DNA of 64,000 nt from positions 67,456,001 through 67,520,000 of the forward strand of contig NC_092356.1 of assembly GCF_963676685.1 (NCBI RefSeq), written 5' to 3'. This DNA is from Mytilus edulis. Its lineage: Eukaryota. The notes under the pieces were generated by a model. The model made no database searches. It saw nothing but the letters and a program-made list of their open reading frames with translations, and was not told where the DNA came from. Positions 8,119-59,379 of this stretch are shown in pieces. How positions within the stretch are numbered: position 1 is the stretch's first letter; each line of letters starts with the position of its first letter. The translations under genes and the position numbers were made by a program.

Positions 8119-8349
8119 AGACTCCAAATATTGCACAGCACAAACAAACACAACAGTCGAGTTTATTTGAAAACCAAAGCAGGTTTATAGCTAACACGGT
8201 AGTTGATGGTATTTACAAACAAGACCTTGACGAATTAGATGCACGGTGTTCACATACATCTCTTGAGCTTCAGCCTTGGTGGGCAGTTGACCTCGGAGCT
8301 GTTTGCAGTATTCACACCGTAGTAGTCTTTGGGAGAACAGACTGCTGTG
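8119..8349 (+). CDS. Gene 1 exon: F-type lectin (fucolectin/FTP) domain, N-terminal half
   Basis: Acceptor tttttctattcag, donor G|gtacgt (phase 1). Translates TPNIAQHKQTQQSS...VVDG...RCSHTSLELQPWWAVDLGAVCSIHTVVVFGRTDCC. Absent from the ORF track. Confidence 0.9.
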
Positions 8350-8409
8350 GTACGTCTTTTCAAATTAATTCAGGCAAGGCTATTATTGTAATAGGTATAA
8401 AAATTAGTT

Positions 8410-8582
8410 TTCCCGTTTGAATGGTTTTACACTAGTAATTGTGGGGCCCGTTATAGCTTGTTGTTCGGTGTGAGCCAAGGCTCCATGTTGAAGGCCTTAC
8501 ATTGACCTATAATGGTTCATTTTATATATTGTTATTTGGATGGAGAGCTGTCTAATTGACACTCATACAACATCTTCCTATA
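8410..8582 (+). repeat. Dispersed SINE-like repeat (other copies at about 41155-41345 minus, 46762-46935, 61730-61905)
   Basis: Shared core GTGTGAGCCAAGGCTCC.TGTTGAAGGCC.TACATTGACCTATAATG...GGAGAG.TGTCT.ATTG.CACTCA.ACCACATCTT. Confidence 0.8.
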
Positions 8583-9796
8583 GCAATCAACATACATACA
8601 AGGATTTACAATAGTTGACTCTATACATTTTAATACCCAATTTTTAAACATACCGTGTTTATACGCGCTATAAATGGTCAAACTCACTGTTGTATTAAGC
8701 GTTCAGTAACAAATTCGATGTGCTGCGGTTGTGAGCCTCTTTGTGGTATTGAAACAAACATACTTTTGAAGTAAGAACTGAAAAGGTCGTCTGATATTGT
8801 TAAATTGTCTTCGCAAGCTTTTAGACTAATTTTGTGACGGTGTATGTTCGTGATTACAGCTGTTGACGGTGCAATTAAAATGAGTTTCGTGAATAAGTCA
8901 GATGCGCTTTTCTGGATTAACCTTATCAGGAACGCCCAAATCAAATATATGAAGGTTAGGAATGTATAAATACGTAGAAAAAATTATTAGTTTTAACATT
9001 GCCATTAGGCGCAAGGTTTGACTAGCCATAAAACCAGGGTCATCCCACCATTTTTTCTTGAAATATCCTTTACTTAGTCAGGGAATGGCAATTGTTTGTT
9101 ATCTTATAGTTCGTTTCTGTGTATGTTTGTATTGGCGTTTGTTTTTGTTGCACCTCTGTGTTTTTTATTGTTCCGTTGCTTTCCTTTTATAGTTGATGTG
9201 TTTCCCTCGGTTTTAGTTTGTTACCCGGATTTGTTTTCTCTCAGTTGATTGAGAAATGTGAAGTGCAGTATACAACTGATGCCTTCATTTATCTATTTTT
9301 GTTCTCGGCTACACAGTTTGATAAAAAAAGTTTTGTTATCCTATTTGCTTGGGAAGACCTTTGAAACGTGTGCTGTAATAATATCAGTAGGACGAGTGGT
9401 AAGTGTTGTGGCGATATTTAGATAGGTGCACTGTTATAGTAGATATAATATTTGTGTTAGCCATACAAATTGCTTGCCCTATTTTGGGAGGTCCTAATTT
9501 GGCTTCAAAGCATACCAGAGTAACAAACAAAGAAATGACATTCAAAAGAAGAAATTTCAAGACAAACGACCCCCTCCTTTTCCAAAATTAAAAAATCAAA
9601 ATTCAAGAGGACAGTACAGGTAAAAATATAAGCCCCGAAAGTAGAGTTCTCAGAAAAGTCATTTTTAAAAATGTATTGTGGGTTATTGGTGTTGTTATTA
9701 GTAGTTCCCTGGAAGTTTTCTATTAGAGCGAGCAGCAAAAAATTTCAAAATACTAAAACTTTGCTTTAATGATCAATTAATCCCCTACCAATTAAA

Positions 9797-10443
9797 TTAA
9801 AGTACAAATATAAGTAAGAACAAATATAAGTAAGAACAAATATAAGTAAGAACAAATATAAGTAAGAACAAATATAAGTAACCATAAATATAAGTAAGAA
9901 AAATGTAGGTAAAAACAAATATAAGTAAGTACAAAATTAAAGAAAAAACAATTATAAGTAGTTACAAATATAGGTAAGAACAAATATAAGTAAGAACAAA
10001 TATAAGTAAGTACAACTATAAGTAACCGTAAATATAAGTAAGTATCATAAGTCAGCACAAATATAGGTAAGTACAAATATAAGTAAGTACAAATATAAGT
10101 AAGTACACATATAAGTACAAATGTAAGTAGGAACAAATAGAAGTAAGTACACATATTAGTAGGTACAAATATAAGTAAGTATCATAAGTCAGTACAAATA
10201 TAGGTAAGTACAAATATAAGTAAGAACAAATATAATTAAGTAAGTACAAATATAAGTAGGAACAAATATAAGTACAAATATAAGTACAAATATAAGTAAG
10301 TACAAATATAAATAAGTATAAATGTAAGTAAGAACAAATAAAAGTTAGTACAATTATAAGTACAAATAAACGTTAGAACAAATAAAATTTAGTACAATTA
10401 AAAGTACAAATAAACGTTAGAACAAATCTAAGTAAGTACAAAT
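9797..10443. repeat. 16-bp minisatellite (TAAGTAAG[T/A]ACAAATA)n, intronic
   Basis: Directly visible tandem units with no spacers. Confidence 0.95.
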
Positions 10444-10562
10444 ATTATTAGTTACTAGTGTGCTAGTGACCAAATACGGTGCATATGGGGTCAGTAAATT
10501 CTATGTGGGATTTACTGACCACATATATACCGTATTACGTCACTAGCACATTATGTAACGAA

Positions 10563-11013
10563 TTTATCTTACCGACTATCTTAACGTGTGAAATTTAGAC
10601 TAGTGACCTATCAGAATGAGCAAGTCTTCGATACTGTTAGAATTTAATAAGAAACTACTTCCATTGATCCTACAAAAACACATGCAAACATGAACATCTT
10701 GTTAGGTTTAAATGTGTTTTATGAATTTATTTCCATCGTACTCATCAATTTCTTCGTCTGTTGAAACCGTTAAGATTTTTCTCAGTACCGTTTTGTTTTT
10801 ATAAAGGGACGTAGCACCACTACTAACCGTGTATGAAATAAGCCCTGCCTCCCTTCTTACCTATTTTAGAATATAAAGGGACGTAACACCACTACTAACC
10901 GTGTATGAGATAAGCCCCGCCTCCCTACTAACCTAACATCAAATATGCACGGTTTGCACGCGGACGCTTCATGACCAATCATATTCCTAGAAATGTATAG
11001 GAGGTAAGATAAA
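10563..11013. mobile_element. MITE-like insertion splitting the 16-bp minisatellite
   Basis: Inverted termini TTTATCTTACC / GGTAAGATAAA and an internal direct repeat of about 50 bp (10801 and 10874). Confidence 0.5.
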
Positions 11014-11309
11014 AGTAGTTACAAATATAAGTAAGAACAAATATAGACGAGAACAAATAGGTAAGTACAAGTATAAGTAACCATAAATATAAGTAAGTGC
11101 GAATATAAGTATGTACAAATATAAGTAAGTGCAAATATAATTATGTACAAATATAAGTAAGTACAAATATAAGTAAATACAAATATAAGTAAGAACAAAT
11201 ATAAGTTAGTTCAAATATAAGTAAGTACAAATACAAATTAGTTCAAATATAAGTGAGAACAAATATAAGTAAGTACAAATATAAGTAAGTACAAATATAA
11301 ACAAGTACA
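11014..11309. repeat. 16-bp minisatellite, second block
   Basis: Same unit as 9797-10443. Confidence 0.95.
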
Positions 11310-11401
11310 ACGTTTACTCAACTATTCACATTATATATGTATACATACTAATTATTTAGTTATAACAAGAGCATTATCCAAACTATATGGTATATTTTCA
11401 G

Positions 11402-11653
11402 TTGAACGCTTGTCAAACTTCAGCATTGACGCAATACGACCATGCAACAACCATTCTGGATGGTTCGATAATAGTTTAACCACACGTTGTTCTTATCAAG
11501 ATGAGGCAACAATATATGCAGAACACAGATGTCGCCTGGACACCATTGGTAGATATGTGCGAATACAAATCCACAAGTTGACAGAGGAATATCTAACCTT
11601 ATGTGAAGTCGAGGTTCATGGAACAATTGTTAACGTATCTGATGACACTAAGT
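11402..11653 (+). CDS. Gene 1 exon: F-type lectin domain, C-terminal half
   Basis: Acceptor attttcag, donor T|gtatgt (phase 1). Translates (V)ERLSNFSI...C...IGRYVRIQ...YLTLCEVEVHG, the canonical FTP C-terminus. Confidence 0.9.
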
Positions 11654-12465
11654 GTATGTTATAATTTAATGTTGGATGTAACACGTCTTCTGATTGGTCT
11701 AGCATTTTTTTGCCTAGGAAATAACCAAAAAATGTGTTGCTCACTTTTAAACATCAATACTAACGGTTCCAATTTTTCTGTACCAAATGCGTCTTCCGCC
11801 ATTTAATGTCTATTATATAAAGCTTGTGTTAAAAGAAATACGAAAATCCAAAAAATGAAAAGCTTATAAAGTAGGAAGAACATAAGTATAGCCAAAAAGC
11901 CGGACCACAGAATCAGAGCTTTGCACGAGGAAGATATATTTTGAAACAGCAATTTTTAATAACACAATATCAGTATAATATGGAAATTTCACTTACACGT
12001 GCTATTTACAGATATATGACACTTCATAAATAGGATAAAATAAAATAAAAAAAAAAAAAAAACTTTTCAGTGTTTTATTTTTATATTCCTTTTTTCAGAT
12101 TCCTTACCATTGACATATTGCAGTTAATAAGATTAAAATATGGGTTCTCATTATAGCAATTACTTTAACAAATGTTAACTGTTTACCGTTTCTGATCACG
12201 TCACGACAAGTTCCAACGATTGCAAACACAAATTATTGATCTTAATAATAACAATGACAAACAGTTGCGAATCATTTGACTTTATCATAAGATCGATATA
12301 GTTATTAATAATTACACTAAAAGGAAATAGTGTTAACATTGCAGCATGTCCCTTGTAGTCAAGGTCGCCATCACTTTTTGTTGATAATTTAAATGCATTT
12401 ATTTCAATTTAACGTTGATACTAAATTCTGTCACAGCTTTTTGACGAAAATACCAAAAGGAAATA

Positions 12466-12523
12466 CAGTCGAACCGAACCGAGTGTTTGACACAACCGAG
12501 TTCGACTGAACGAGGTTCGACTG
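12466..12523. mobile_element. 58-bp Tigger/pogo-type mini-MITE
   Basis: TA|CAGTCGAACC...GGTTCGACTG|TA. Confidence 0.75.
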
Positions 12524-12695
12524 TATATCCCTACACTGGGCACCAGAGTGTACTATTTACAAGAACATATTGAAAGTTTGAAACCCACAAAAAGGCTTCG
12601 TTAACTTATGAACTTCTCACAAACATGTTTTAATATCAAATATGTTCAATCAATATAACAACAGTTATGAATAATATTATCTGTTATTACCATAG

Positions 12696-13078
12696 CAACA
12701 GCTGCTACTTGTGATGAATCAACAAATACCATATCATCATCTTTAACAGGACAGGAAGAACGATCGGTCATAATTCCTCCACAAAATAACACTCGGTGCT
12801 TCTGTTCTTGTGAACAAAAACAGCAAACAAACGTAAATACTCATTTGGATGTTCACGCGAATGAAATAACTCCATTAGATATTCTTGTAACCAGAATCAA
12901 ACAAGAACTAACAATTGATAAGAAAAACACATCTGAATATAAGAGATCTAAAACCTCACAACGAGACACACGTTTGTCGTCCATTTGTATTGGTGTTATT
13001 GGCAGTGGTATTATTGCAGTTCCAGTTATATCTATAATCACATGTGATATTATGAACTGGTTTGCTCAGTGGAATTGA
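12696..13078 (+). CDS. Gene 1 last exon: short S/T linker, CxCxC, conserved juxtamembrane module, TM helix, 9-aa tail
   Basis: Acceptor ttattaccatag, phase 1, in frame with ORF 12845-13078. RCFCSC...LTIDKKNTSEYKRSKTSQRDTRLSSICIGVIGSGIIAVPVISIITCD. AATAAA at about 13181 and 13236. Confidence 0.8.
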
Positions 13079-13930
13079 GATGTACAAATCTAAACAAAAG
13101 GAATGGTTGTTATTGGTATACAGCTGAACTCCAAGAATTTCTGTTATTTGTATAGAACTATTATACAAATGCTATACTGAAATAAACATGTTTTTTGTGT
13201 GAATTTTGATTAAGCCTATGTATCACAACATCTGAAATAAATATATAACAGTAAACTACAATTATTAAATTGACAATGCATATAAATGCAATGCATTAAA
13301 AAAAAGATATTACTTGCAGCTATACATCAATTTTACAGTGTTCATATTTTACAGTGACAAATAAGTTGAAATTGAACTACTTACAACATGGTCGTACGAT
13401 GACTCTGTAGTTGTGGTCCACTCCGTTTCATATTCCCACTTAACTTAAGCAAAAAATAAGGGGTAATATAAATAATGATATTTGGCATGTTGTTGTACAT
13501 ATATACGAAATATAACATCTCATTAATGGATATTAGTTGGTCAACCCCTTAGTCATGGTCTTTTGACAATGTATTTTTGAGTCTAGGTCGCCTGTTTAAA
13601 TACATGGAACCTAGCCTCTAGTAACAAGGTAAGTTACGATTAAAAAAAAAATAGTCAAATATCAAATGCATATTAATACTTTGGTGAATTTTGATTTACG
13701 TTGTCATATTCTTTCATGCATTTTCATATACATAAATATCATATGAATTTATTCAACAATGCGACAACCCATCGCCAAAAATAATTAAAAGATATATTAT
13801 AAGTATAGTTCAATATACAGGTTAATCAATAAAAAATATATAAAAAAAGTGCAAACTGTTATTGAAAAAAAAATTCATGTATTTGTAGAATGATATATAT
13901 TATATATTTAACACACATTATTTTAGTTGA

Positions 13931-14097
13931 GAAATAATTGATGCAAGCTAAACTTTATTGTAGTTTTAACATGGGTAGGCATTATATCAAATTCGTGATT
14001 ATTTTGCCCGAGCGATAGTGTGAGCTACAATAACACGAATATAATGTTTACCCATTTTAAAACTACAATAAAGTATAGCTTGTATCAATTATTTCGA
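13931..14097. repeat. Long imperfect palindrome (hairpin-type non-autonomous element)
   Basis: GAAATAATTGATGCAAGCT...ACTTTATTGTAGTTTTAA...ATGGGTA is mirrored by TACCCAT...TTAAAACTACAATAAAGT...AGCTTGTATCAATTATTTC. Confidence 0.75.
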
Positions 14098-15074: not shown

Positions 15075-18000
15075 TATCCTTCAACCCCCCAAGTTCGTCC
15101 CACCCGCAAGTTCGTCCACCATCATTGTTTTCATTTATCGCGCATGCGGAAGACCCGTGACGTCACTTACCAGCTGATCAGCGTTCTATATATAGTAAAG
15201 AACAACGTGGAAAAGTGAAACCAAAACATGAGATTGAAACAGGTAAATAATCATAAAAATAAAAAAATCTTTGTCAACACCGCCATTTTTACTAATTCCC
15301 TTTTCTATCTTTCTTTAAATGGATTTTTTAATAGTAAAACACAGGGGAAATCCCTTCTAAACTGAGTTGCCGATTTGTTTACATTCCAGTGATCATGACT
15401 GATGACCTATAAAAGTATGTCAGGCCAAGCATACGTAAAAATCGTATCTTACAAATATGGAAATTTTAATGAATTTTTTGCACAGATTATGAAAAATTCG
15501 GGAAAAATGATGAATTATCGCTATAAAATGGCTTCTACTGCCGAATGTGATTTTTTCCACAGCATCACGGTTGCTAAAAAAGCTAAGGCTTTGTCATTTC
15601 CAGACCAATATTTACAATAAAGGGCTCAAAATCTAGCTGAGACTTTACACTTTACATACAAAGAAATAGATATACACACATACACAATGCTACAACAAAA
15701 AATACAGCAATAAACAAAAGACATCTCATTACATTTCAGGCTAAACCTACCTTCCTCAGACATGATAAAAAGTACAGGTTGTACAGTCCCACGGCTTTGA
15801 CAAATGCATACATATCAGTAAGGAATAATGAAATGTCACAAAGAAAAGCAGCTCTTCAATTTAATGTCCCAAGGCAAACTCTACGTGATAGAATCACTGG
15901 CAAAATAAGTCCAGATTGTGTCACCACTGGAAGGGCACCTGTCTTTTCGCTTGAAGAGGAGGCACGCATTGTGGAACATGTAAAGTCCATGGCTTCATAT
16001 GGATATGGGTACACTAGACAAGAAGTTACAGATCTAGCTACTGATTTTGCCTACACAATCAAAATAAAACCAAGGAGTGAAGAATTTACCTTGAGATGGT
16101 TTGAGGGTTTCATAAAAAGATGGCCAGAACTTAGAGTGGTGAAACCTAGAAGTTTGGAGATTCTTCGTGCAAAATGTGGTTCTGTTGCTAATGTTGAAAA
16201 ATACTTTGCAAGCTTAACGGAAGTCGTCCTAAAATACAATCTTCAAGATAAACCACATCTCATATTTAATGTTGATGAGAAGGGTATAACACTGAATCAC
16301 AAACCACCTAATGTTGTATCTGGAATTGAATGTACCACATCATCAGTAACATCTGGAAGGTCTAGTACTACCACCATACTTGGATGTGGCAGTGCCTCAG
16401 GATTTGCTGTTCCTCCGTATTTTGTTTTTGAAGGGAAAAGATTGAATAATGAATTGATGAAAGGTGCAACACCTGGTGCTGTTGGTGCAGTATCAGACTC
16501 AGGATGGTCCAATACCAACATATTCAGACAATATTTAACAGATCATTTTCTTAAATACATCCCTGGTAGAAACAATGAAAACGTACTTCTTCTCCTCGAC
16601 GGACATAAATCACATGTAGCAGTTGATATAATTGAATGGGCACAGGAACATCACATCATCATTCACGTCCTACCAGCTCATACCTCACATATTTTACAAC
16701 CTTTGGATGTTGGATGTTATGGGCCGTTGCAGCGTATTTACGATAATGAATGTCACAAAACCATACGTAAAAACTCCTCAGTAATAACCAAATATAATAT
16801 ATGTGAACTAGCCTGCAAAGCATACCAGAAAGCACTGTGCCCAGAAAACCTTCAGTCGGCATTTAGAAAGACTGGAATATACCCCTTGGATAAGACTGTC
16901 ATTAACCAAGATCAACTGAAACCATCAGAGGTATTTACAAGAAATGAGGAATGTAAAGAAACTACAGAAACTACAGATGAACCAAAAACAGATGAGATCC
17001 AAATGCAAGAAGTCGAATTAGTCGAAGTTGATATGAAAAGAGAAGTAACAGAAGCTGTTGAAAGTGCTGTGACTGTGACTGATGTTGTTGAAGATATGCA
17101 AGACCATGATACTGATGTACCACACTTCTTTGCGGAACGAATAAACAAACTAAAAAAAATGAAGTCCGAAAATGACAAGAAAGAAAGAAAAACACTTGGA
17201 AAGATTGTCTCTGGTATGCCAATAACTGAAAGTGAGGTAGCAGAAAAGGTTAAACAGCACGTTGAAAACCAAGGAAAAAATAAACCAAGCAACCAGAGTT
17301 GTAAGAAAACTGGAAAACAAATTAAAAAGAATACGTCCACTTCTGCTTCATCACTTACATCAGGACCTAGCCACACTAAACTTGGACCTAGCAACATAAC
17401 TAATAAACCAGGACCTAGTCACAAGTCTCCAAAACCAGGACCTAGTCACATAAACATTGATGATTCCATGGACTTCAGCGATACAGACGATGAAGAAATT
17501 CCAGAAGTCGAATTATGCTGTGTGTGTAAACAGTTTACCCCAAAACAAATTAGACTTGGGGTTGGTGTTGAACTTACCAAATGGGTGCAGTGTGACAATT
17601 ATAGGTGCATGCACTGGACACATCTGAAATATTGTACAGAATTGAGGGTTGTGAGGAGAAATACCCAGTTTTACTGCATGCATTGCAAGGACATGGAATA
17701 GACAATTTTGCCAAATTTTCTTGTTATAATTACTTGTTGAAAATTTTATTGTTAATTATTTAATTTTTGTTGATTTTTTTCAATACTTACCCTTTAAAAT
17801 TAACTTTGAACAAAAAATGCGAAAATGCAATGTGTTTGGCCTAACCTGTGTGACGTAACGAGGTTGTACATCCGGTGGACGAACTTGAGGGGCGAAAGTA
17901 GAACAGGCATTGATTTCAAGTAAGTGTTCACTTTTGCATTTCCGTTATACTACGGTCTTCTGTTGATTCTTTTTCATGCCAAAGATTATAATTTTATTAA

Positions 18001-18098
18001 ATCTTTATTACTGCAAATTATCGGGAATATACAGGAAACGTATCTGAAAATGCACCGCGATATTCGTTAGGTGGACGAACTTTGGGGAGTGGAGGATA
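15075..18098 (+). mobile_element. Full-length pogo-superfamily DNA transposon (DD35D, Fot1/Passer-like)
   Basis: Imperfect TIRs TATCCTTCAACCCCCCAAGTTCGTCC / GGACGAACTTTGGGGAGTGGAGGATA bounded by TA. Inner copies of AAGTTCGTCCACC at 15108 and (inverted) at 17874. Confidence 0.9.
15228..17701 (+). CDS. Pogo-like transposase (HTH-psq, CENP-B HTH, DDE_1, C-terminal PHD-type finger); predicted exons 15228-15242 and 15740-17701
   Basis: MSQRKAALQFNVPRQTLRDR, WFEGFIKRW, FNVDEKG, LLLLDGHKSH, LQPLDVG (35 aa between D2 and D3), CxxC...WVQCD...C..W.H..C...YCxxC. ATG exon MRLKQ|gtaaat splices in frame to catttcag|GCT. Confidence 0.9.
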
Positions 18099-31253: not shown

Positions 31254-32143
31254 TCAACGTCTATTAAATTTGACGACAATGTAGCTATGACTGTCAAAGA
31301 ATACAAATAGGGCTGTAACAAGACAAATGAAGACGACTCCTACACATCCTATGGATTTAGCCGATACACGATCATCTGAAGCTGATGTCTTCGAACGACG
31401 CATCCGGGTGGTATTTGATTTGTTGATACTCAGTATTGTTCTCATTAAGTATAATTCTGGTTCCATTACATCTGCTAATTGATCAAGAGTGAGATTCATT
31501 CCACGTAAGAAATCCCATTTATCCTCTCCAACCTTAGAACAGGGACATAGGCATCCAGTCATCATGACTGAAGTTGTCATCTCCGATTGAGCATGGATTG
31601 TTTGTTCTGTAGTTTTCACTGTATGTTTTCTTGGTGTTGTCATCTTTATAGTTTTCACTGTAGACTGCCCATGTGTTGTCATGTCGGTAGTTTTCACTGT
31701 AGATTGTCCAGGTGTTGTCATGTCGGTAGTTTTCACTGCATATTTTCTTGGTGTTGTCGTCTCTATAGTTTTCACTGTAGATTCTCTCGGTGTTGTCGTC
31801 TCTATAGTTTTCACTGTAGATTCTCTCGGTGTTGTCGTCTCTATAATTGTTAATGTAGACCGTCCAGGTGTTGTAATGTCGGTAGTTTTCAATGTAGATT
31901 GTCTAGGTGTTGTCATGTTGTTAGTTTGATCTGTAGATTGTTCAGGTGTTGTCATGTCGGTAGTTTTCACTGAAGATTGTCCAGGTGTTGACATCTCTAT
32001 AGTTTTCACTGTAGATTGTCCAGGTGTTATCATGTCGATAGTTTTCACTGTAGATTGTCCAGGTGTTGTCATGTCGATAGTTTTCACTGTAGATTGTCCA
32101 GATGTTGTCTTTTTGGTGGTTGGCACTGCTGGTGTAATTATGA
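31254..32143 (-). CDS. Gene 2 last exon: Thr-rich 13-aa repeat stalk (about 13 units), CxCxC module, TM, short tail
   Basis: Acceptor ttttatttaacag, phase 1, in frame with ORF 31254-32165. Confidence 0.9.
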
Positions 32144-32334
32144 CTGTTAAATAAAAACATTCCAATATTACAAAAATAGAAATTCATCTTGATAATTTTT
32201 TAAATAATTTTTTTGGGTTAATTTCCTGTTGCTGGCTCTAATTAATGTCAATTTATCACTTAATTTATGATAATAAACAAGTTGGACACTATGCACACAA
32301 CATTTAAAAATGTACACAACACAACAATTACAGT

Positions 32335-33478: not shown

Positions 33479-33620
33479 ATTCATAAACAGAATTCCGCCA
33501 GGGTCCTCCACATATTTGCGACGAATTCCCTCCACATGCATGATTACATTCAGTATCAGTTACCTTTGTGTACATATCTGAACCGCCCATTGAATCACCA
33601 CAAAAACACTCATAGATATT
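33479..33620 (-). CDS. Gene 2 exon 3: WSC domain C-terminal half
   Basis: tgttttacag|NIYECFCGDSMGGSDMYTKVTDTECNHACGGNSSQICGGPWRNSVYE|gtaaga, 142 nt, phase 0 to 1. Confidence 0.93.
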
Positions 33621-33749
33621 CTGTAAAACAAATAATAATTTGAAAAATTACAAAATAGGATATAAATGTTAATAAAATAATATACAAACCACAGACACAG
33701 GGTCGTGGATGTGAGTTATCATAAGCTAAAAACAATACACTGAACGAAT

Positions 33750-38100: not shown

Positions 38101-38221
38101 CACATTTTAAAATATTTAAGAATCCTTACTTAAAAATTGGGCATACAAAGATAAAAAGAGCTCCATGCCCTAAACCCCTGTGACACCAGTGATTCATAAA
38201 GTGCCCTTGCTTACGACTTAC

Positions 38222-38349
38222 TTGTAATCCTAGGTAGCGTCGATTATAACATATTGTTTTGCACATTTCAAGTGTCATTAGACTATTAGCATGCCTTTCA
38301 TCTAACATTCTCTGCCAGTCATCTTTGTAGCAACCAAGGTATTTAACGT
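38222..38349 (-). CDS. Gene 2 exon 2: WSC domain N-terminal half
   Basis: ttttttttgcag|(D)VKYLGCYKDDWQRMLDERHANSLMTLEMCKTICYNRRYLGLQ|gtaagt, with WSC motifs YLGCY.D, MT.E.C...C and Y.GLQ. Confidence 0.93.
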
Positions 38350-39467
38350 CTGCAAAAAAAAGTTTAACATTTCTATGAGGATGACTAGTAATTTCCAAAT
38401 ACAGTTTACCTTGTGGAAGTCCTGAAGAGTATGGTTTACCGTTAAACGCAATTGTTGTTATCAAATAACATATTTATTGAAAACCGAATGTAAGCAACTT
38501 AACTGTTATTTGAATGATGTAAGCTTTTTGAACGTCGTCTAGGGACCCATGTACAAATTAAAACATTACAGCACTCATATAATTAATGATTTGAAGTGAC
38601 AATCTAATAGACTCATTATGATAATGAACATGAACCATCGACAGCCACTGAACTACAGGCTCATGAGTTGGGAGTGGCAAATAAAAAAATGTGGCGGGGT
38701 TGGAGATGTTTTTGAGTGCCCGACTACCCACTTACCTGGAGTGGTTGGATAAAACTTGGTCAAATATTGTTCAGGCTAGGTCGAGTATGGTTCAGATTAG
38801 GTCGAGTCTGGTTCAGACACATATAAAATAGTTAATACTGGTCGAGTAAAGGTCGAGTACAGATTCAGACTATTAAGTTTGGTTCAGACTACAGTCGAGT
38901 AGTATTTGCGAGTATGGTCTTGAGGAAACGATGATAGTCCGTCGGAAGGGGACGATAAAAGGCTGACCCGTGTTAAGAGAGAGCGATATCTCTTGCAAGT
39001 TAAAGACACCCTTGTAGATTTCGAAAAAGAGCAGGCTAATGCCACTACAAGGCAGCACTCGCACCCGCAAAGTGGAAAGGGATTAATATAAGTTGCAAAA
39101 CTTGTTTCCCAATCCATTATAATTAAATATGTTTAAACTAAGTAATTTTAGACCAATTCAGAGTAAACATCAGTATAGTCGACTACAGATATATCTGGTT
39201 TTTAGTGATAGTAAAAGTTTAAACCAGAAGAACGTTGGAGCCTTAATTCTGAATTTGTGATATCTTTACAAATGGCTTTGATCAGTGTGAAAACATCCCA
39301 ACGGTAAATTGTGACCTACAATTACTATATAGTATCATTAATGTTTACATCAAACCAAAACTTAAATAAAATCTATATATGAGTATTAACCGTTTACTTT
39401 TAATCTTTAACCTCCCACTGTAATACATATAGTACAAAAAGCCCTGCGTGTTTACAATCTGACTTAC

Positions 39468-40520: not shown

Positions 40521-41834
40521 AACAGCCATTCACATTTATTTGTAACATGCTTTCAAACTAGGCAATAATATTCTGAATACAGAACACAATTAGTTTGCTT
40601 ATACCTCAACGACGACATTTGGGTTATCGGTAGTGTAAAAAGAAAAATCACAAAATATATTGAACTCCGAGGAAAATTTAAAACGGAAAGTTCCTTATCA
40701 AATTACAAAATTAAAAGCTCAAACACATCAAACCAATAGATTTTAACTGTAATATTCCTGACTTGGTACATACATTTTCTTAAGTAGCAAATGGTGGATT
40801 AAGCCTGGTCTTTATTGCTAGCTTAACTCCTTTGTTATATGACAATTGCATCATATTCAATTTTACTGATAACGATGTGTGAACAAAACAAATATACATA
40901 ATAGGTAAAAATGTCAAAAATAGAAAAACAACTGAAATTAACATAAACCAATAACACAATGATGGGATGTAAAAGTACAGAGTCATGTCAAATAAATATC
41001 ACTAAAACAGACTAAACAGTAGAAGTAATATTAATAAATACAAATACAAAAATACTATAACACGTTATTAAGATGATAAACAACGTCAGAACCCAGAATC
41101 TATACTTCAAGACCATCTTTTATTTTTTGTGCAGTTGATACGGAACAAGTACACATAGGAAGATGTGGTATGAGTCCCAATGAGACAACGCTCCATCCCA
41201 GTAACAATTTATACATGTAAACCATTATAGGACAATGTACGGCCTTCAACATGGAGCCTTGGCTCACACCGAACAGCAAGCTATTTAGGGCCCCCCCCAA
41301 AATTACAAGTGTAAAACCATTCAAAGGGGAAAACCAACGGTCTAATATATATAAAAATGAGAAAGAGAAGGGTCTTGGTACCATGCGATAATCATTTTTA
41401 GAAAAAAAAAAGTTTTTTGACATATTAAATGCAACTCATCAGATATTCCAGACTCATCATAGTTTTCGCTAGACCCGTGTCTAAGTATAATTATTTAAAA
41501 AATTAAACAATATTCATGCTTAAGTGTTTGTATCATTATATCATTATGATCGATATACAAGATCGTCACTTTATATTATTGATTATAGAAAGGCTTTAAT
41601 GTTTTTATTCGAACACGGGTCCCTAGAGGAGGTTCACAAAAACTGACATCCAAAGAATAGGTAAGTTGCTAATATTCTGTTTTCAATAAATATGTTATGT
41701 GTTAAAAATTGTTTTACACATCGACGATTCTTCTTACTTAATAACTCGTCATCTGAATTGCGTCTTTATAGATATTGAGTTAATATGAGGATGAATAAAA
41801 TGTAGATTGTAGAGACAAGGCTGTAATTGGCATT

Positions 41835-51494: not shown

Positions 51495-52845
51495 AAACAA
51501 TCAGAACTTTTCTGATTGAGTTTCATTAATATATCCCCCAGAACTAGAAATTAAAGAAACAACAGACACGGTTTTCATCGCCTCATTTTAAGACTTATAT
51601 CTCGAATTTGACTTACACAGTCATCTCAGTACCAGAATCTATGACACACGAGACGATTTTAATTTTGAAAATTATAAACTTCCCCCACCTTAGTAGCAAT
51701 CTACCAACTTCACCTGCATATGGGATATATATTTCCCAACTTGTTCAATATTCATGAGTTTGCAGTTCCTACTCAGACTTTGTGAAACGTCATCAGTGTC
51801 TGAGTAGAAAGTTGATGAACCAGGGGAATGTCAAAAAACGTCTCGTCCTTTTTCTAAAAAAAATTCGTCGGAAGGTACCAATACCTTGTTGGTAAATATT
51901 CCGTATCAACTGCACACATAATACATGATGGTCTTGATGTGTAGATTCTGCGTACTGATGTTGTTTATCATCTTAACAACGTATTATATTGTTCTTTCAT
52001 TTGTCTTTTTTCTATTATTAATATTACTGTTACTGTTGGATTGTTTTACGTGATATCTGTTTAACGTGGCTCGGTACTTAATGTGTTTGTATCATCTTTC
52101 ATTTTTTGCTGGTGTGCTTTTTATATGCGACTTTTTGTGTTTCTTTGGTTCTTATAACGTGACTCTGTACTTTAAAAGATCCCGTCAATATGTTATTGTA
52201 CTATAATATATCATTATGATGTATTTCTATTATGAATAAGGAAATACGTTGAACCACATACGTCAAAATTATGCAATCGCGAAGTGGAATGAACTATTTG
52301 TGGATTCTTATAAATTCGATATAACTTTATTTTGGACTATTTCAAATCTCGGTCTACTTCTGAAATTATTTCATACATACTTTCATTTTTAATCCTATAT
52401 GCTAGCATTGCCCATGATTTTTGTTTTTAAATTGTTTGTGTATAACGTATTTTCGTGACGTATTTTCTGACGTAAGACACGCAAATCAATGAATGTGTTT
52501 GTAGATAAAGATGTTTTTTTTGTGTTCTGTTATTTTGTTCCTTTTAAAATTGTAACACGATGGTGACTGCTGTACCCATATTTTGAATATTTTATTTATA
52601 TTGTCTGTTTAGTTCACGCATCATTGTGAATATAACGGAATTTGACGAGACTGTCATCAAAGTGATAGTTTTAGCGCTTTAAAACCAGGTTTAATCCACC
52701 ATTTTCTACAGTTGAAAATGTCTGTACCAAATCAGGAATATGACAGTTCTTGTCCAATCGTTTTTTATATGTTTTGTTAATTTATTTTTGCCATGTGATT
52801 ATGAACTTTCCGATTAGAGTTCAGTATTTTTGTGATTTTACCTTT
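51495..52845 (+). mobile_element. 3' fragment of the same Penelope-like family with its 3' non-coding tail
   Basis: YPPELEIKETTDT, RDDFNF and a 3' region similar to 27570-29020. Confidence 0.8.
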
Positions 52846-52983
52846 TATGAAACAGTTGACATTTAATGTCATTTTGGGCAACTGTAGTCCCTACTCTTTA
52901 GGACTACCACTTACTTAACTGTATTTTGATATTGCATGTCGGACTTATAGATAAGGTTTTTCATTCGGAATATTTTTTTCCAG

Positions 52984-53120
52984 AAGTTAAATACCTTGGT
53001 TGCTACGTTGATGACTCAAGCCGGATGTTAGATGAAGGCCATGGTATTGTTCTTTTTGGTCAAATGACACTTGAAAAGTGCAAAGGCTTATGCATTAATC
53101 ACCGGTACCTAGGATTACAA
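52984..53120 (+). CDS. Gene 3 exon 2: WSC domain N-terminal half
   Basis: tttttttccag|(E)VKYLGCYVDDSSRMLDEGHGIVLFGQMTLEKCKGLCINHRYLGLQ|gtaagt. Confidence 0.93.
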
Positions 53121-54370
53121 GTAAGTGGTAACCAATGAAACATGTGGAGCAGGATCTGATTACCCTTCCGGAGCACATGAGATAACCTCTAGTTTTTGGT
53201 GAGGTTCGTGTGTGCTATTGTTTGTCTGTTTGTCTTTTTAATTTTTAGCCACGGCGTTTTATATTATTTTTTTGATTTATGAGTTTGACTGTCCCTGTGG
53301 TATCTTTCGTCCCTTTTTTTTGGGAGACATGCATCACCTGTTTCGTTTGGGATTATGGTTTAAACCACTTTTTTCTTTTTTTTTGTGCACAATTGATAAT
53401 TTAACATTATTTAACATTTAATCTGATTTAACTCGACTAATGTGTGACTGAGATGCACAATTTATTATCGTTCATCTGATTGTACCTTACTATGACTGGT
53501 GATTAATGTTGATGTATAAAAGAGGGACGAAAGATACCAGAGAGACAGTCAAATCAAAGATAAAGATTGAAAACAAACTGATAACGCCATGGCTAAAAAG
53601 AAAAAGACAAACAGACAAATAAAAATCCAGAAGACAAAACATAGAAAAACCCATCAAAACTGGGGATGATCTCAGGTGCTCCGGAAGGGTAAGCAGATTC
53701 TGCTCCACATGTGGCAAGCATCGTGTTGCTATGTTATTACAAATCCGGTAAAAAGTATAACTCGGTAGGTCACAATAGTTAAAAGGGAAGGGTATTGTGG
53801 TTACGTTCTTGTAGGAGAACTATTAATGATAGCTCTATGTGATTGTATAGTCATTGTTTTATGTATATAAGAATATAAAAAAGGGAATTTTGTTGATATG
53901 TATAATATCTAGAAGGGGCTAGCGAGAAAAGAAATTTGCTATCTGGGGAAAAACAATGCGAATGCTGTTTACATTTTTAAATTTAAGCTCAAGTCTGATA
54001 TCAAAAATCTTAAACACGATAATCTGTGACCATTATAAGCAGACCAGTCCTCTGGTCTGGTCAATTGCAGACTTGTCCACAGGTTATCTTGCTTGTCTGC
54101 TAAAAAATTCTCAAGTAAACTTAGAAAGTGGTCAACAAGTCTGCTCCAAGTTAAGTTTTGTCAAGGTTAGGACCGCACCCATTTCTAAGGAACATATCCG
54201 ATATAATCTGCGAAACGGTTATTCCATATTTCATAATATAAATGTTGAATAAAAGATATGTACAAAAGATTCCTGCTGCTGTTATTTAAATTTTGGTGTT
54301 CGTAAATAACTGGACAACTTTTTCCGATTGTTGCGGACTTCTTTGCAAGCGAGTGTATTTGACATCTCAT

Positions 54371-55520: not shown

Positions 55521-56447
55521 AATCTAATCCGTCAATAGGAATAAACATAGCAAAATTTAAGCTGCCCAAGTTGGTTTAATTTAAAATTTCTAGATAAGTA
55601 ACCTTTATAATTACAAGCATATTATTTGAGTTGATACTTGTTCTTGTTCGTATGATTCTATGAATGATTTTAGAACACATCATACACATGAAAAATAACC
55701 GCCTAGTTCCTGACTTGGTATAAAATGACATTAACGGTACAAAATTTTGTGCAACATATGCGCATTTCGACAATACGTATCTCATGTTCAATCATGCCAA
55801 AATATTTAAAAATCCAAAAATGTTAAGCCTAAAATAGTTATCAAAGGTACCAGGCTTATAGTGGTAACAATTTCATTAACGGTACCAAACTTTCATTACC
55901 AGATGCGTACGGCTACGACGAAGACCTTAGCTTCATAAAAGAGGGACGAAAGATACAAAAGAGACAGTCAAACTCATAAATCGAAAAAAAACTGTCAAAG
56001 CCATGGCCACAAATGAAAAAGACAAACAGAAAACAATAGCACACACAATATAGAAAACTAAAGAATAAGCAACCCGAATCCCATTAATAAAAATAGGGGT
56101 GATCTCATGTGCTCCGGAAGGATAAGCACATCCTGCTCCAAATGTAACATGTTTATGAGCCGATTGCCGTAAAATGTGAAGCAGTTAAATCTCAAAGGGA
56201 TCAGTTTGTTGTTTGGTGTTGCTGTTAATCCACTGTCATGTCACTTATAGGTTTAACCTCGCCGCATTCTTTGTATATCTGTGTAAATTTAAGCTACTAA
56301 TTTTCAGTGGTTGGTGTGAGTCACAAGTTTAGTGTGTTTAGCTTATGATCACTTATATCATCGACCCTGTGTCTGTAGTTGGCAATTTTATATTATAAAC
56401 ATTTATATCATATTTCATAATTTGTCAAATTGTTGATTTTTTTACAG

Positions 56448-56589
56448 AATTCCTATGAGTGTTTTTGTGGCGATTCTTTGGGCGGTTCAGATGTGTACCA
56501 AAAGACAAATGAAAGTGAATGTAATTACGCATGTCAAGGGGATTCGTCGCAAAAATGTGGTGGATTCTGGCGAAGTTCTGTTTATGAAT
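56448..56589 (+). CDS. Gene 3 exon 3: WSC domain C-terminal half
   Basis: ttttttacag|NSYECFCGDSLGGSDVYQKTNESECNYACQGDSSQKCGGFWRSSVYE|gtaact, 142 nt. Confidence 0.93.
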
Positions 56590-57787
56590 GTAACTTTTTT
56601 TAATGTGTTTCTGGTACTTATCCTTTCTCTAATTATAACCCAAAATATATGAAGAGAATTAAAATTCAAATGTAGTTTGCAACATGTTTTTTTTTGGGGG
56701 GAGGGGGGTTTCAACAACACAATTATAATCAAGATTTATATGTTTTCAACTTAACTGTCGCACACTATGTTATCGAACAGACATTTTCTTAATTTTCATT
56801 CAGACGAAAGCCCATCTGTGCTACATTATTTTGATCCTGGTATCTATAATGGGTGTTTTATCACATACGTTGGATGTGATATCATTCATTTAAACCAATT
56901 GTCAGCAATAATCAATGAAATGTTGATGCGTAATGATACATAATGTCAATATAGATTTCGGATTCAACTATAATAAATATCAGTAAGCAATATATGGTTG
57001 GATAAGGGAATTTCCTATTCAGAATTATTTCTCTTCGTTTATCCAAACTATGCATTTACTTTCATACATTGCAATTACCGGTGGGCAGTATGAAAGAGGG
57101 ACGAAAGATACCAGAGTGACATTCAAACTCAGGAATCGAAAATAAACTAACAACGCCATCGCGAAAAATGAAAAAAAGACAAACAAACAAACAATAGTAC
57201 ACATGGCACAACATAGAGCACTAAAGAATGAGCAGCACGAACCCCACCAAAAACTAGGGGTTATATGAGGTGCTCCGGAAAGGTAAGCTGATGCTGCTCC
57301 ACCTGTGGCACCCGTCCTGTTGAAAATGTTATAACAAATCCGGTAAATAGTCTAATTCGGTAGGTCACATTCATGAAAGGAAAGGGTATTGTAGTTACGA
57401 CGTAAGGAACATATCCAATATTATTTGTGAAACGGTTATTCCATAACGATCAACCAACTCGTGATGGAGTCCGTAAAATTTACGAAGGGATGATTTTAAT
57501 ATTTGGAACTCTTGTTTAAGTACTTATACCTCCTAAGGGTATAAAATATTTGCAAAAGAAAAAGTACCTCGGACGTTTATTATTCATTCTTTGTAAAAGT
57601 GTTGTGTTCCTTATATATTTTTTTATTTTGTTGTACAGTGTCTCCAACTTTTTTTTATCATACATTGAGTGATAAATAGACATCAATCTAAGCCAGCAAC
57701 AGGAATTAAGCCAAAATAATTCATTTGAAAAATTTGTACAGATGTTCTTGGTTTATTTTGTAATTTGTTATATTTATATTTTCATAG

Positions 57788-59379
57788 TCATTTCAACAGT
57801 GCCCTCAACAACCAAAATGACAACACCCGAACAATCTACAGTAAAAATTACAGAGATGACAACACATGAACAATATACAGTGAAAATTACAGAGATGGCA
57901 ACACCTGAACAATCTACAGTGAAAATTACAGAGATGGCAACACCTGAACAATCTACAGTGAAAATTACAGAGATGGCAACACCTGAACAATCTACAGTGA
58001 AAATTACAGAGAAGGCAACACCTGAACAATCTGCAAAGAAAACTACAGAGATGGCAACACCTGAACAATCTACAGTGAAAATTACAGAGATGGCAACACC
58101 TGGTCAATCTACAGTGAACACTACAGAGACGACAACAACTGGACAATCTACAAAGAAAACTACAGAGATGACAACACCTGAACAATCTACAGTGCAAACT
58201 ACAGAGATGACAACACCTGAACAATCTACAGTGAAAATTACAGAGACGACAACACCTGAACAATCTACAGTAAAAAATACAGAGATGACAACACCTGAAC
58301 AATCTACAGTGAACACTACAGAGATGACAACACCTGAACAATTTACAGTGCAAACTACAGAGATGACAACACCTGGACAATCTACAGTGAAAATTACAGA
58401 GACGACAACACCTGAACAATCTACAGTAAAAAATACAGAGATGACAACACCTGAACAATCTACAGTGAACACTACAGAGATGACAACACCTGAACAATTT
58501 ACAGTGCAAACTACAGAGATGACAACACCTGGACAATCTACACTGAAAATTACAGAGATGACAACACCTGAACAATCTATAGTGAAAACTACAGAGATGA
58601 CAACACCTGAACAATCTACAGTGAAAACTACAGAGATGACAACACCGGAACAATCTACAAAGAAAACTACAGAGATGACAACACCTGAACAATCTACAGT
58701 GCAAACAACAGAGATGAAAACACCTGAACAATCTACAGTGAAAATTACAGAGATGACAACACCTGGACAATCTACAGTGAAAACTACAGAGATGACAACA
58801 CCTGAACAATCTACAGTGCAAACAACAGAGATGAAAACACCTGAACAATCTACAGTGAAAATTACAGAGATGACAACACCTGGACAATCTACAGTGAACA
58901 CTACAGAGATGACAACACCTGGACAATCTGCAAAGAAAACTACAGAGATGACAACACCTGAACAATCTACAGTGCAAACTACAGATATGAAAACACGGAA
59001 AGAATCTACATTGACAACAGCAAAACAAACAACCCATGCTCAATCACGGGTGACAACTACAAACATGATGATTGAATGCATATGTCCCTGTTCTAAGGTC
59101 GGGAAAGGCAAATGGAATTTCTTGCGAAGAATGAATCTCACTCTTGATCAATTAACAGAATTACTGGAACCAGAATTAGACTTAATGAAGAAAGAACTGA
59201 GTATAAACAAATACAATACATCGCAGATGTGTCGTTCCAAGACATCAGCTCCAGATGATCGTGTATCGGCTAAATTCATAGGATGTGTAGGAGTCGTCTT
59301 CATTTGTCTTGTTACAGCCCTGTTTGTATTCTTTGACAGTCACAGCTACATTGTCGTCAAATTTAATAGACGTTCTTGA
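57788..59379 (+). CDS. Gene 3 last exon: mucin-like 13-aa repeat stalk (about 31 units of 39 nt), CxCxC module, TM, short tail
   Basis: Acceptor attttcatag, phase 1, in frame with ORF 57742-59379. Confidence 0.92.

What the first reader, a model, noticed from the sequence alone, without database searches (positions are those of the whole stretch)
8119..59379. Modular receptor family: different glycan-binding heads on one conserved, unnamed membrane anchor module
Seen: three genes end in CxCxC, about 30 aa, then an ungapped 47-aa block. Gene 1 has LTIDKKNTSEYKRSKTSQRDTRLSSICIGVIGSGIIAVPVISIITCD and gene 3 has LSINKYNTSQMCRSKTSAPDDRVSAKFIGCVGVVFICLVTALFVFFD, 18/47 identical, including RSKTS, DxRxS, IGxxG and an Asp exactly 14 residues after the second Gly. 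Their heads are unrelated folds: F-type lectin in gene 1, WSC in genes 2 and 3. Known: both are carbohydrate-binding domains. Inference: a family of cell-surface glycan or pattern receptors with swappable heads, variable stalks and a constant anchor. Tails are only 9-13 aa, so the conserved polar juxtamembrane face and TM Gly/Asp may mediate oligomerisation (CxCxC plus helix), binding to a shared signalling partner, or shedding. I cannot assign the module to a named domain.
Basis: partly seen in the sequence, partly recalled or inferred. Interest (0 to 1): 0.85.

Follow-up and report, generated by a model that had tools for sequence, protein, structure and literature searches.

The report
Shared membrane anchor of mussel receptors
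Three mussel genes with unrelated sugar-binding heads end in the same roughly 100-residue stalk-end, helix and membrane-anchor cassette, which is an unnamed, mollusc-wide module present in hundreds of genes per genome and joined to at least ten kinds of extracellular head.

Summary
The window lies on a 75,045,669-base Mytilus edulis chromosome (C13).

**The three genes.** All three last exons (12671-13078 +, 32183-31254 -, 57676-59379 +) encode the same layout:
- CxCxC;
- N-glycosylated amphipathic helices;
- a polar juxtamembrane stretch;
- a membrane helix that starts GxxG and holds an Asp 17 residues after the first Gly;
- a short basic tail.

**Gene 1 belongs.** A profile built without gene 1 scores it at 80 bits (E 8e-18).

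**Size of the family.**
- The profile finds 524 candidate loci in this genome.
- It finds 2,723 protein clusters (50% identity) in public data.
- Every named hit is a mollusc, either bivalve or gastropod.
- The module sits at the C-terminus in 161 of 168 proteins.

**Heads.** They include WSC, Sushi, Ig, C-type lectin, F-type lectin, SUEL, TSP1, Kringle, PAN and FAMeT-like domains.

**No name.** Pfam, PDB sequences, Foldseek and six literature searches give none.

**RNA.** Contigs from two studies splice the lectin exons of gene 1 in frame onto the anchor exon.

**Conservation.** R63, G70 and D88 are identical in all 207 distinct modules.

**Not shown.** Function as an oligomerising or partner-docking anchor is inferred only. 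A dimer prediction gave no verdict. Gene 1 has no identifiable signal peptide.

The parts
8119..8348 (+). Gene 1, first F-type lectin exon. It holds the His of the fucose triad and ends in ...GRTDCC.
   Evidence: Pfam PF22633, 2.7e-8. GT..AG joint 8348->11401 in RNA contigs of runs X2 and X11. 100% match to XP_071145328.1.
11401..11653 (+). Gene 1, second F-type lectin exon. It ends one base into a codon (phase 1).
   Evidence: Joints 8348->11401 and 11653->12696, both GT..AG. 100% match to XP_071145328.1. Splice contexts checked.
12696..13078 (+). Gene 1, last exon coding part: a short Ser/Thr stalk plus the anchor cassette, which is 12791-13075. The stop codon is 13076-13078.
   Evidence: The leave-out profile scores it 80.4 bits.
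7290..7541 (+). Upstream exon used by the RefSeq model of gene 1. It has no signal peptide and is doubtful, because a degenerate copy with stop codons lies at 18898-19108.
   Evidence: tblastn of P0172. The RNA contig X2 record 15 does not use this exon.
41050..41116 (-). Gene 2, predicted signal-peptide exon. The ATG is at 41116 and the 3' end is not fixed.
   Evidence: Hydrophobic ATG-led ORF, similar to the gene 3 candidate at 51925. Prediction only.
38216..38362 (-). Gene 2, WSC exon 1.
   Evidence: Pfam WSC profile 1-45. tblastn with P0005 and P0002.
33480..33623 (-). Gene 2, WSC exon 2.
   Evidence: Pfam WSC profile 42-82, 1.4e-9. tblastn.
31254..32183 (-). Gene 2, last-exon ORF. The mucin-like stalk is 12.8 copies of a 39-bp repeat at 31610-32109. 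The anchor cassette is 31257-31559.
51925..51990 (+). Gene 3, predicted signal-peptide exon. The 3' end is not fixed.
   Evidence: Prediction only.
52983..53126 (+). Gene 3, WSC exon 1.
56442..56588 (+). Gene 3, WSC exon 2.
   Evidence: Pfam WSC profile 43-82, 1.1e-9. tblastn.
57676..59379 (+). Gene 3, last-exon ORF. The mucin-like stalk is 30.8 copies of a 39-bp repeat at 57817-59018. The anchor cassette is 59071-59376 and the stop codon is 59377-59379.

Best explanation
The three genes belong to a very large mollusc family of single-pass surface proteins. The layout is: variable recognition head, then a Ser/Thr-rich tandem-repeat stalk, then a conserved anchor cassette of about 100 residues. 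The stalk and the cassette are encoded together by the last exon.

**Shown: the cassette, in order.**
- CxCxC.
- About 35 residues of amphipathic helix carrying an N-x-T sequon.
- A basic, polar juxtamembrane stretch with S-A-x-D-x-R-x-S.
- A membrane helix that opens with G-x-x-G and holds an invariant Asp 17 residues after the first Gly.
- Six or so further hydrophobic residues, then a short basic tail. The tail often contains Cys and has no signalling motif.

**Shown: the family.**
- It is real, significant and huge.
- It is mollusc-wide and unnamed.
- It is C-terminal and is combined with many different heads.

**Inferred: how it works.**
- The cassette tethers and presents the heads on the cell surface.
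- The CxCxC plus helix probably makes disulphide-linked oligomers, which would raise lectin avidity.
- The invariant Asp/Arg/Ser before the membrane, the GxxG and the buried Asp probably dock these short-tailed proteins to themselves or to a shared membrane partner. That partner has not been found, and would serve signalling, trafficking or regulated release.
For: **Family size.**
- The gene 3 and gene 1 modules each match at least 150 scored loci in this genome.
- The profile finds 524 candidates. All 150 that were scored have E <= 3e-14.
- In public proteins, 2,723 clusters match at E <= 1e-3 and 1,397 at E <= 1e-10.

**Position and heads.**
- The module is C-terminal in 161 of 168 proteins, with a median of 3 residues after the profile match.
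- Head tally among 108 hits: Ig 14, WSC 12, C-type lectin 10, TSP1 8, FAMeT-like 5, F5/8-C 3, and also Sushi, Kringle, SUEL and PLAT.

**Head swapping.** On the anchor tree, heads need 15 changes. The minimum possible is 6 and the shuffled mean is 36. Branches with SH-aLRT support of at least 95% force at least two origins each for the Ig, SUEL/TSP1, FAMeT and F5/8-C heads.

**Conservation in 207 distinct modules.**
- R63, G70 and D88 are 100% conserved.
- D61 98%, C5 99%, C3 97%, C7 94%, S58 94%, S65 92%, G73 87%.
- Sequon at positions 21-23: N 76%, T/S 88%.
- No indel occurs between G70 and D88.

**Other support.**
- dN/dS is about 0.4 among the nine chromosome-13 paralogues compared.
- Tails have a median of 17 residues. 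None has an ITAM-like motif, 170 of 193 have at least 2 K/R, and 106 of 193 have Cys.
- The AlphaFold2 monomer (pLDDT 78.7) has helices at 14-20, 25-43, 51-57 and 65-101.
- RNA contigs join the lectin exons of gene 1 to the anchor exon in frame.
- Gastropod members (Elysia, Bulinus) keep the S-A-P-D-x-R-x-S...G...D core.
- The module has no Pfam, PDB or Foldseek match.
Against: - No experiment or prediction here shows oligomerisation or a partner. The ESMFold2 dimer job scored 0.02, which the tool reports as no verdict.
- Gene 1 has no identifiable signal peptide. Public models start MTETPN... or MDRYIS..., and I found no fitting 5' exon in 28 kb upstream. Its surface topology therefore rests on family analogy.
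- Only 24 of 98 public models show a clear N-terminal hydrophobic core by a crude measure. Many of those models are obviously 5'-truncated.
- Some gastropod members lack the CxCxC, so that part is not universal.
- I could not query InterPro, PANTHER or the AlphaFold DB, so a name elsewhere cannot be fully excluded.
Confidence: 0.72

Rival explanations
1. Release cassette. The conserved juxtamembrane stretch and the top of the membrane helix form a protease site (sheddase, rhomboid-type or convertase). On this reading the family are membrane precursors of soluble lectins and adhesins that are shed into mucus or haemolymph.
For: - Small-residue pairs S-A (94% and 87%) and S-[S/A] lie just outside the membrane.
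- GxxG at the top of the helix and Pro at helix position 80 in 36% of modules are helix-weakening features.
- The chromosome-13 WSC subfamily carries R-x-R-R before S-K.
Against: - The basic residues do not form a consistent convertase motif across the family. Gene 3 has M-C-R-S and gene 1 has Y-K-R-S.
- An invariant Asp on the cytoplasmic side is not explained by this model.
- Gene 1 appears to make an anchor-less mRNA by reading through the donor at 11653. That is a different route to a soluble form.
- No cleavage data exist.
Confidence: 0.18
2. Passive anchor. The cassette is only a membrane tether. Its similarity reflects common descent, tandem duplication and gene conversion, not a specific interaction.
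For: - Copies lie in tandem arrays.
- Genes 2 and 3 have identical membrane helices and nearly identical tails while differing elsewhere. That pattern suggests gene conversion.
- Heads mostly cluster on the anchor tree.
Against: - Three residues are 100% conserved and six more are 92-99% conserved, with no indel across the membrane helix, in 207 modules whose identities to the reference module are mostly 25-45% in the alignments made. These modules span bivalves and gastropods.
- A plain hydrophobic tether would not keep a buried Asp and an Arg.
- dN/dS is about 0.4.
Confidence: 0.08
3. GPI-attachment signal, or for gene 1 a tail-anchor. In the first case the S-A pair is the attachment site and the hydrophobic stretch is removed. 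In the second, gene 1 lacks a signal peptide and is inserted post-translationally with its lectin domain in the cytosol.
For: - A small-residue pair lies about 10 residues before a 19-residue hydrophobic stretch.
- Gene 1 has a tail of only 9 residues without basic residues, and no signal peptide in three public models.
Against: - 170 of 193 tails carry at least 2 K/R after the hydrophobic stretch, which is atypical for GPI signals.
- Pro occupies the +2 position in 30% of modules.
- The invariant residues inside the helix would be discarded after GPI attachment.
- The heads are disulphide-rich extracellular domains, and an N-x-T sequon sits in the cassette.
- RefSeq-grade relatives such as P0054 and P0080 do have hydrophobic N-termini.
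Confidence: 0.05

Closest known systems
Vertebrate short-tailed activating immunoreceptors that pair with DAP12, FcR-gamma or CD3 through charged membrane-helix residues (from general knowledge, not tested here)
   Same: Large, tandemly arrayed families of lectin- or Ig-headed single-pass proteins. Their tails are too short to signal, and they keep a conserved charged residue in the membrane helix.
   Different: In the vertebrate system the receptor carries a basic residue and the adaptor carries the Asp. Here the receptor carries an Asp near the inner end of the helix. No adaptor is known, there is no sequence similarity, and the CxCxC, helix and D-x-R-x-S elements have no counterpart.
Fungal Wsc1/Mid2-type cell-wall sensors (WSC head, Ser/Thr-rich stalk, one membrane helix; from general knowledge)
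   Same: Genes 2 and 3 have the same order: a WSC domain with 8 Cys, a long Ser/Thr-rich repeat stalk, and a single membrane helix.
   Different: The fungal sensors signal through a long cytoplasmic tail. Here the tail is 12-13 residues. The conserved cassette between stalk and membrane is absent from the fungal proteins, and the same cassette serves many non-WSC heads.
Kremen (Kringle-WSC-CUB-membrane helix)
   Same: One family member (P0138) has Kringle plus WSC in front of the anchor.
   Different: The genes in this window have no Kringle or CUB domain. The anchor is the shared element, not the head.
Clusters of polymorphic single-pass transmembrane (TM1) genes in Biomphalaria snails (PTC1/GRC, PTC2; PMC7494358)
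   Same: These are mollusc gene clusters encoding single-pass proteins of 166-530 codons with the membrane helix away from the N-terminus. The paper reports no known domains and proposes them as surface recognition molecules. The module found here occurs in another planorbid snail, Bulinus.
   Different: I did not test whether the PTC proteins carry this module, because no sequences were available in the paper's held supplements. The paper reports no homology outside gastropods.
Disulphide-linked mucin-stalk receptors such as CD8 or PSGL-1 (from general knowledge)
   Same: Head, O-glycosylated stalk, cysteine(s) close to the membrane, single helix and short tail.
   Different: No sequence relation. 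Here the membrane-proximal part is a conserved 100-residue cassette shared by hundreds of genes.

Membership tests
Any curated domain (Pfam-A 2025) or solved structure, tested for the anchor module | A significant profile or fold match | tested here: not met
   There was no Pfam hit above noise for the three modules at E <= 10. The profile against PDB sequences gave a best E of 0.065 on unrelated GPCRs. Foldseek against PDB gave nothing. The ESM Atlas neighbours are 'hypothetical protein' clusters from Mollusca with no common Pfam family. UniRef names stalk-plus-module-only proteins 'Uncharacterized protein'.
F-type lectin domain (head of gene 1) | Match to the F5/8 type C / FTP domain profile | tested here: met
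   The exon at 8119-8348 hits PF22633 at 2.7e-8. The orthologue P0064 hits PF22633 at 1e-12 over profile positions 3-91 of 91. UniRef names it 'Fucolectin tachylectin-4 pentraxin-1 domain-containing protein'.
F-type lectin domain (head of gene 1) | Fucose-binding motif H-X24-R-X-D-X4-(R/K), as given in PMC5712786 | tested here: inconclusive
   His, Arg-x-Asp and the second Arg are all present (H...GRTDCCVER). The spacing is X26, not X24 (read). The motif spans the exon junction 8348|11401, which RNA contigs confirm.
WSC domain (heads of genes 2 and 3) | PF01822 match over the whole profile, and eight cysteines | tested here: met
   Searched exon by exon. Profile positions 1-45 score 19.7 and 20.2 bits. 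Positions 42-82 score 38.4 and 38.8 bits, against a cut-off of 27.8. Each gene has 3 + 5 Cys.
Adaptor-coupled activating receptor (DAP12 / FcR-gamma type) | A basic residue in the receptor's membrane helix, pairing with an acidic residue of an ITAM adaptor | tested here: not met
   The conserved charged residue is an Asp, at 100%. No tail has an ITAM-like motif. No adaptor was identified. The resemblance is in working principle only.
GPI-anchored protein | A C-terminal hydrophobic signal with no charged cytoplasmic tail | tested here: not met
   170 of 193 modules have at least 2 K/R after the hydrophobic stretch, and the median tail is 17 residues.
Type I membrane protein (whole family) | An N-terminal signal peptide | tested here: inconclusive
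   Similar signal-peptide-like exons are predicted for gene 2 (41116, minus strand) and gene 3 (51925, plus strand). RefSeq relatives P0054 and P0080 have hydrophobic N-termini. Only 24 of 98 public models do, and gene 1 has none in any model.
Biomphalaria PTC/GRC TM1 proteins | Sequence match of those proteins to the module profile | not tested

The most novel reading that the evidence does not exclude
Molluscs run a receptor system organised like the vertebrate adaptor-coupled immunoreceptors. Hundreds of short-tailed lectin-, Ig-, WSC- and TSP1-headed surface proteins share one docking cassette. Its invariant buried Asp, together with the D-x-R-x-S collar, pairs with a basic residue of a common signalling or trafficking subunit that has not yet been found. 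The same cassette may underlie the polymorphic single-pass gene clusters that control schistosome resistance in snails.
Probability: 0.2. Interest if true: 0.85.

Novelty: new variant of a known kind. Interest (0 to 1): 0.6.

Why it matters
Bivalves and snails have greatly expanded sets of lectin-like and Ig-like surface proteins. How these proteins signal with almost no cytoplasmic tail is unknown.

A single conserved anchor cassette is shared by hundreds of such genes per genome, with three residues that never vary. This has three uses:
- It gives a concrete handle. One profile can catalogue the whole receptor set.
- One set of point mutants (the CxCxC cysteines, the Arg before the membrane, the buried Asp) can test assembly.
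- One bait can fish for a common partner.

The cassette also deserves a curated domain entry. At present these proteins are annotated only by their heads, or as 'uncharacterized'.

Tried and rejected
- **Dimer prediction of the module** (2 copies). The score was 0.02, under the mark, and no controls were run. The tool gives this as no verdict, so it is not used for or against binding.
- **Foldseek of the AlphaFold2 monomer against PDB**. No match.
- **Profile against PDB sequences**. Only chance-level hits.
- **Six literature searches**. No description of the cassette was found. The Biomphalaria TM1 papers are a lead only.
- **Supplements of PMC7494358**. They hold no protein sequences, so the PTC link could not be tested.
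- **Word-indexed homology searches**. They returned only 17 and 8 hits and added little on taxonomic range. Whether the module exists outside molluscs remains open.
- **Search for the 5' exon of gene 1.**
  - The pattern for an exon ending ATG-ACN-G followed by GT gave one irrelevant match in the window and none in 28 kb upstream.
  - Hydrophobic ATG-led ORFs upstream at 5189 and 5552 lie in a repeat that is also present at 9022-9245, so I rejected them.
- **Nearest anchor paralogue of gene 1** (chromosome 13, 57.73 Mb). No F-lectin exon lies within 9.8 kb upstream. This is inconclusive.
- **GPI-signal reading.** Rejected on tail charge.
- **Universal furin site.** Rejected because the basic motif is not consistent across the family.

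Full report
**What is in the window.**

The window is 64 kb at 33% G+C and has no N runs. It is G000:C13:67456001-67520000, on a contig of 75,045,669 bases. That length equals the contig that carries the RefSeq protein XP_071145328.1 of Mytilus edulis. That protein matches four exons of the window at 96-100%. So this is the blue mussel genome.

The open frames around them are 12671-13078 (+), 32183-31254 (-) and 57676-59379 (+).

I count 19/47 identities between gene 1 and gene 3 in the ungapped block, and 18/47 between gene 1 and gene 2. No shuffle out of 200,000 reaches 18.

**Gene structures.**

I searched the exons one by one, by reference.

Gene 1:
- Exon 8119-8348 hits the F5/8-type-C / F-lectin profile PF22633 (2.7e-8).
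- Exon 11401-11653 is the second half of that domain. It matches XP_071145328.1 at 100%.
- The His...Arg-x-Asp-x4-Arg fucose triad described for F-type lectins (PMC5712786) is present with a spacing of 26 instead of 24. It spans the exon junction.
- The last exon starts at 12696.

Genes 2 and 3:
- Each has two WSC exons, covering profile positions 1-45 and 42-82.
- Gene 2 exons are 38362-38216 and 33623-33480. Gene 3 exons are 52983-53126 and 56442-56588.
- Similar signal-peptide-like first exons are predicted at 41116 (-) and 51925 (+).
- Their last exons carry a 13-residue (39-bp) Thr/Ser/Pro-rich tandem repeat before the conserved end. There are 12.8 copies in gene 2 and 30.8 in gene 3.

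**RNA evidence for gene 1.**

I laid transcriptome-sized contig sets and one raw RNA-seq run on 7200-13150.
- They show a GT..AG joint 8348->11401 in runs X2 and X11, with 231 bases on the shorter side.
- They show a GT..AG joint 11653->12696 in the same two runs, which come from two studies. The sides are 26 and 19 bases.
- The phases fit. Exon 11401-11653 ends one base into a codon, and 12696-12697 complete it in the frame of the anchor ORF.
- Independent public gene models make the same junctions (CAG2204417.1, VDI55674.1, XP_071145328.1).

One contig (X2 record 15, 930 nt) is spliced at the first intron but runs through the donor at 11653 to 11988. That would end the protein at a stop at 11662-11664, giving a lectin without an anchor.

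**Is gene 1 really related?**

Yes.
- With the gene 1 module as query, this genome returns at least 150 scored loci. These include many that the gene 3 module also finds, and gene 3 itself at E 1.8e-4.
- A profile of 42 modules that excludes gene 1 and its nearest paralogue scores gene 1 at 80.4 bits. That is E 7.7e-18 for a search space of 1.8e9 sequences. It matches only the three ORFs in the window.

**Size, range and position of the family.**

- The profile of 44 modules (alignment A1) finds 524 candidate loci in this genome. Only 150 were scored, and all have E <= 3e-14.
- The loci lie in tandem arrays on most chromosomes. Fifteen scored matches lie on chromosome 13 between 67.47 and 67.69 Mb (two of them with in-frame stops), and these include the three window genes.
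- Against 1.84 billion representative proteins, the profile finds 2,723 clusters at E <= 1e-3 and 1,397 at E <= 1e-10.
- In 161 of 168 retrieved proteins the module is at the C-terminus. The six proteins with two modules look like fused neighbouring genes.
- Every named source is a mollusc:
  - four Mytilus species;
  - Saccostrea, Argopecten, Ylistrum and Potamilus;
  - the gastropods Bulinus and Elysia.
- The names are 'hypothetical', 'uncharacterized', or derived from the head or stalk ('mucin-22-like', 'contactin-6-like', 'complement factor H-like').
- I could not see the weak tail of the hit list, so presence outside molluscs is open.

**Heads.**

Pfam scans of 108 hits give this tally:

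| Head domain | Proteins |
|---|---|
| Ig | 14 |
| WSC | 12 |
| C-type lectin | 10 |
| TSP1 | 8 |
| FAMeT-like | 5 |
| F5/8-type-C | 3 |
| Sushi | 2 |
| Kringle | 2 |
| SUEL lectin | 2 |
| PLAT | 1 |
| PAN | 1 (seen in the separate scan of P0080) |

- Many proteins have heads with no Pfam match.
- On a tree of the anchor alone, heads are clustered, needing 15 changes against a shuffled mean of 36.
- They are not monophyletic, since the minimum possible is 6. Branches with SH-aLRT support of at least 95% force at least two origins each for the Ig, SUEL/TSP1, FAMeT-like and F5/8-C heads.
- The tree rests on only 112 columns, and head groups came from BLAST clustering. So this supports repeated head exchange but does not date it.

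**Anatomy and conservation of the cassette.**

Conservation in 207 distinct modules aligned to the profile:

| Element | Conservation |
|---|---|
| Three Cys of CxCxC | 97%, 99%, 94% (where that part is present) |
| Trp at position 14 | 78% |
| N-x-T/S sequon at 21-23 | N 76%, T/S 88% |
| Hydrophobic stripe at 27, 31, 35, 38, 42, 44 | Leu/Ile/Met/Val as the commonest residues |
| Ser58 | 94% |
| Ala59 | 87% |
| Asp61 | 98% |
| Arg63 | 100% |
| Ser65 | 92% |
| Gly70 | 100% |
| Gly73 | 87% |
| Asp88 | 100% |

- There is no insertion or deletion between Gly70 and Asp88.
- The six residues after Asp88 are on average hydrophobic (Kyte-Doolittle hydropathy 1.23). The Asp therefore sits inside, or at the inner edge of, a hydrophobic span of about 25 residues.
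- Tails after the Asp have a median of 17 residues. 170 of 193 have at least 2 Lys/Arg, 106 of 193 have Cys, and none has an ITAM-like motif.
- AlphaFold2 with the alignment gives mean pLDDT 78.7, with helices at 14-20, 25-43, 51-57 and 65-101. Confidence is highest in the membrane helix.
- Among the nine chromosome-13 paralogues compared, dN/dS is about 0.4 in every part of the cassette.
- Gastropod members keep the S-A-P-D-x-R-x-S...G...D core but can lack CxCxC.

**Comparison with what is known.**

- The three modules have no Pfam match.
- The profile has no PDB sequence match and the model has no Foldseek match.
- The ESM Atlas neighbours are unnamed mollusc clusters.
- Six full-text literature searches found no description of the cassette.
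- The closest analogies are functional, not sequence-based:
  - vertebrate short-tailed receptors that pair with ITAM adaptors through charged membrane residues, although here the receptor bears the acid;
  - fungal Wsc1-type sensors, which share the WSC, Ser/Thr stalk and single-helix layout but have long tails;
  - disulphide-linked mucin-stalk receptors.
- Snail clusters of polymorphic single-pass genes linked to schistosome resistance (PMC7494358; PMC13712769) are an untested lead.

**Mechanism.**

Shown:
- A conserved, C-terminal, lineage-wide cassette sits behind variable heads and variable stalks.

Inferred:
- The orientation is type I. The evidence is the sequon, the disulphide-rich heads and the basic residues at the far C-terminus.
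- Covalent oligomers form through CxCxC and the amphipathic helix.
- The invariant collar, GxxG and buried Asp make a specific contact, either with the protein itself or with a shared partner.

I put about 0.9 on the family-and-cassette statement. I put about 0.35 on partner or self docking as the reason for the invariant residues, and about 0.2 on regulated release.

The dimer prediction gave no verdict.

The main weakness is gene 1, for which no signal peptide can be found.

**Other elements in the window.**

These are only described.
- A pogo-type transposase ORF lies at 15779-17701.
- A BEL/Pao-type LTR retroelement has three consecutive ORFs at 21673-26623.
- Reverse-transcriptase fragments lie at 1421-3308.

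No N runs occur in the window.

Noticed in passing
window 11401-11988 (+): An RNA contig (run X2, 930 nt) is spliced at 8348->11401 but reads through the donor at 11653 into the intron. It would encode an F-lectin ending at the stop at 11662-11664, without stalk or anchor. This may be a secreted isoform, or it may be an unspliced precursor.
   Followed up: partly
window 7290-7541 (+) and 18898-19108 (+): The N-terminal 85 residues of the RefSeq model XP_071145328.1 come from 7290-7541. A degenerate copy with stop codons lies at 18898-19108, so this 'exon' may be repeat-derived. The RNA contig X2 record 15 instead has 111 nt of 5' sequence that lie outside 7200-13150.
   Followed up: partly
window 33746-35105: A 40-bp minisatellite of about 34 copies (88% matches) lies inside the intron between the second WSC exon and the first WSC exon of gene 2. 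It gives long spurious ORFs on the minus strand.
   Followed up: partly
window 15779-17701 (+): An uninterrupted 640-residue ORF has HTH_psq and DDE_1 domains. This is a pogo/Tigger-type DNA transposase, lying between gene 1 and gene 2.
   Followed up: no
window 21673-26623 (+): A BEL/Pao-type LTR retroelement has three consecutive, slightly overlapping ORFs: DUF1759 gag-like; DUF1758 peptidase plus reverse transcriptase; and Peptidase_A17 plus integrase. It is described only.
   Followed up: no
window 31257-31350 (-) and 59281-59376 (+): Genes 2 and 3 have identical membrane helices and nearly identical tails, although the rest of the cassette differs (79% identity overall). This suggests local gene conversion between the two oppositely oriented paralogues.
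   Followed up: no
window 62396-63305: An earlier scan note (s1-830556) reports a retrozyme array with hammerhead ribozymes here. I did not examine it.
   Followed up: no
window 5103-5291 and 9022-9245 (+): Two copies of a repeat have ORFs that look like signal peptides (hydrophobic and ATG-led). They could mislead gene prediction upstream of and inside gene 1.
   Followed up: partly
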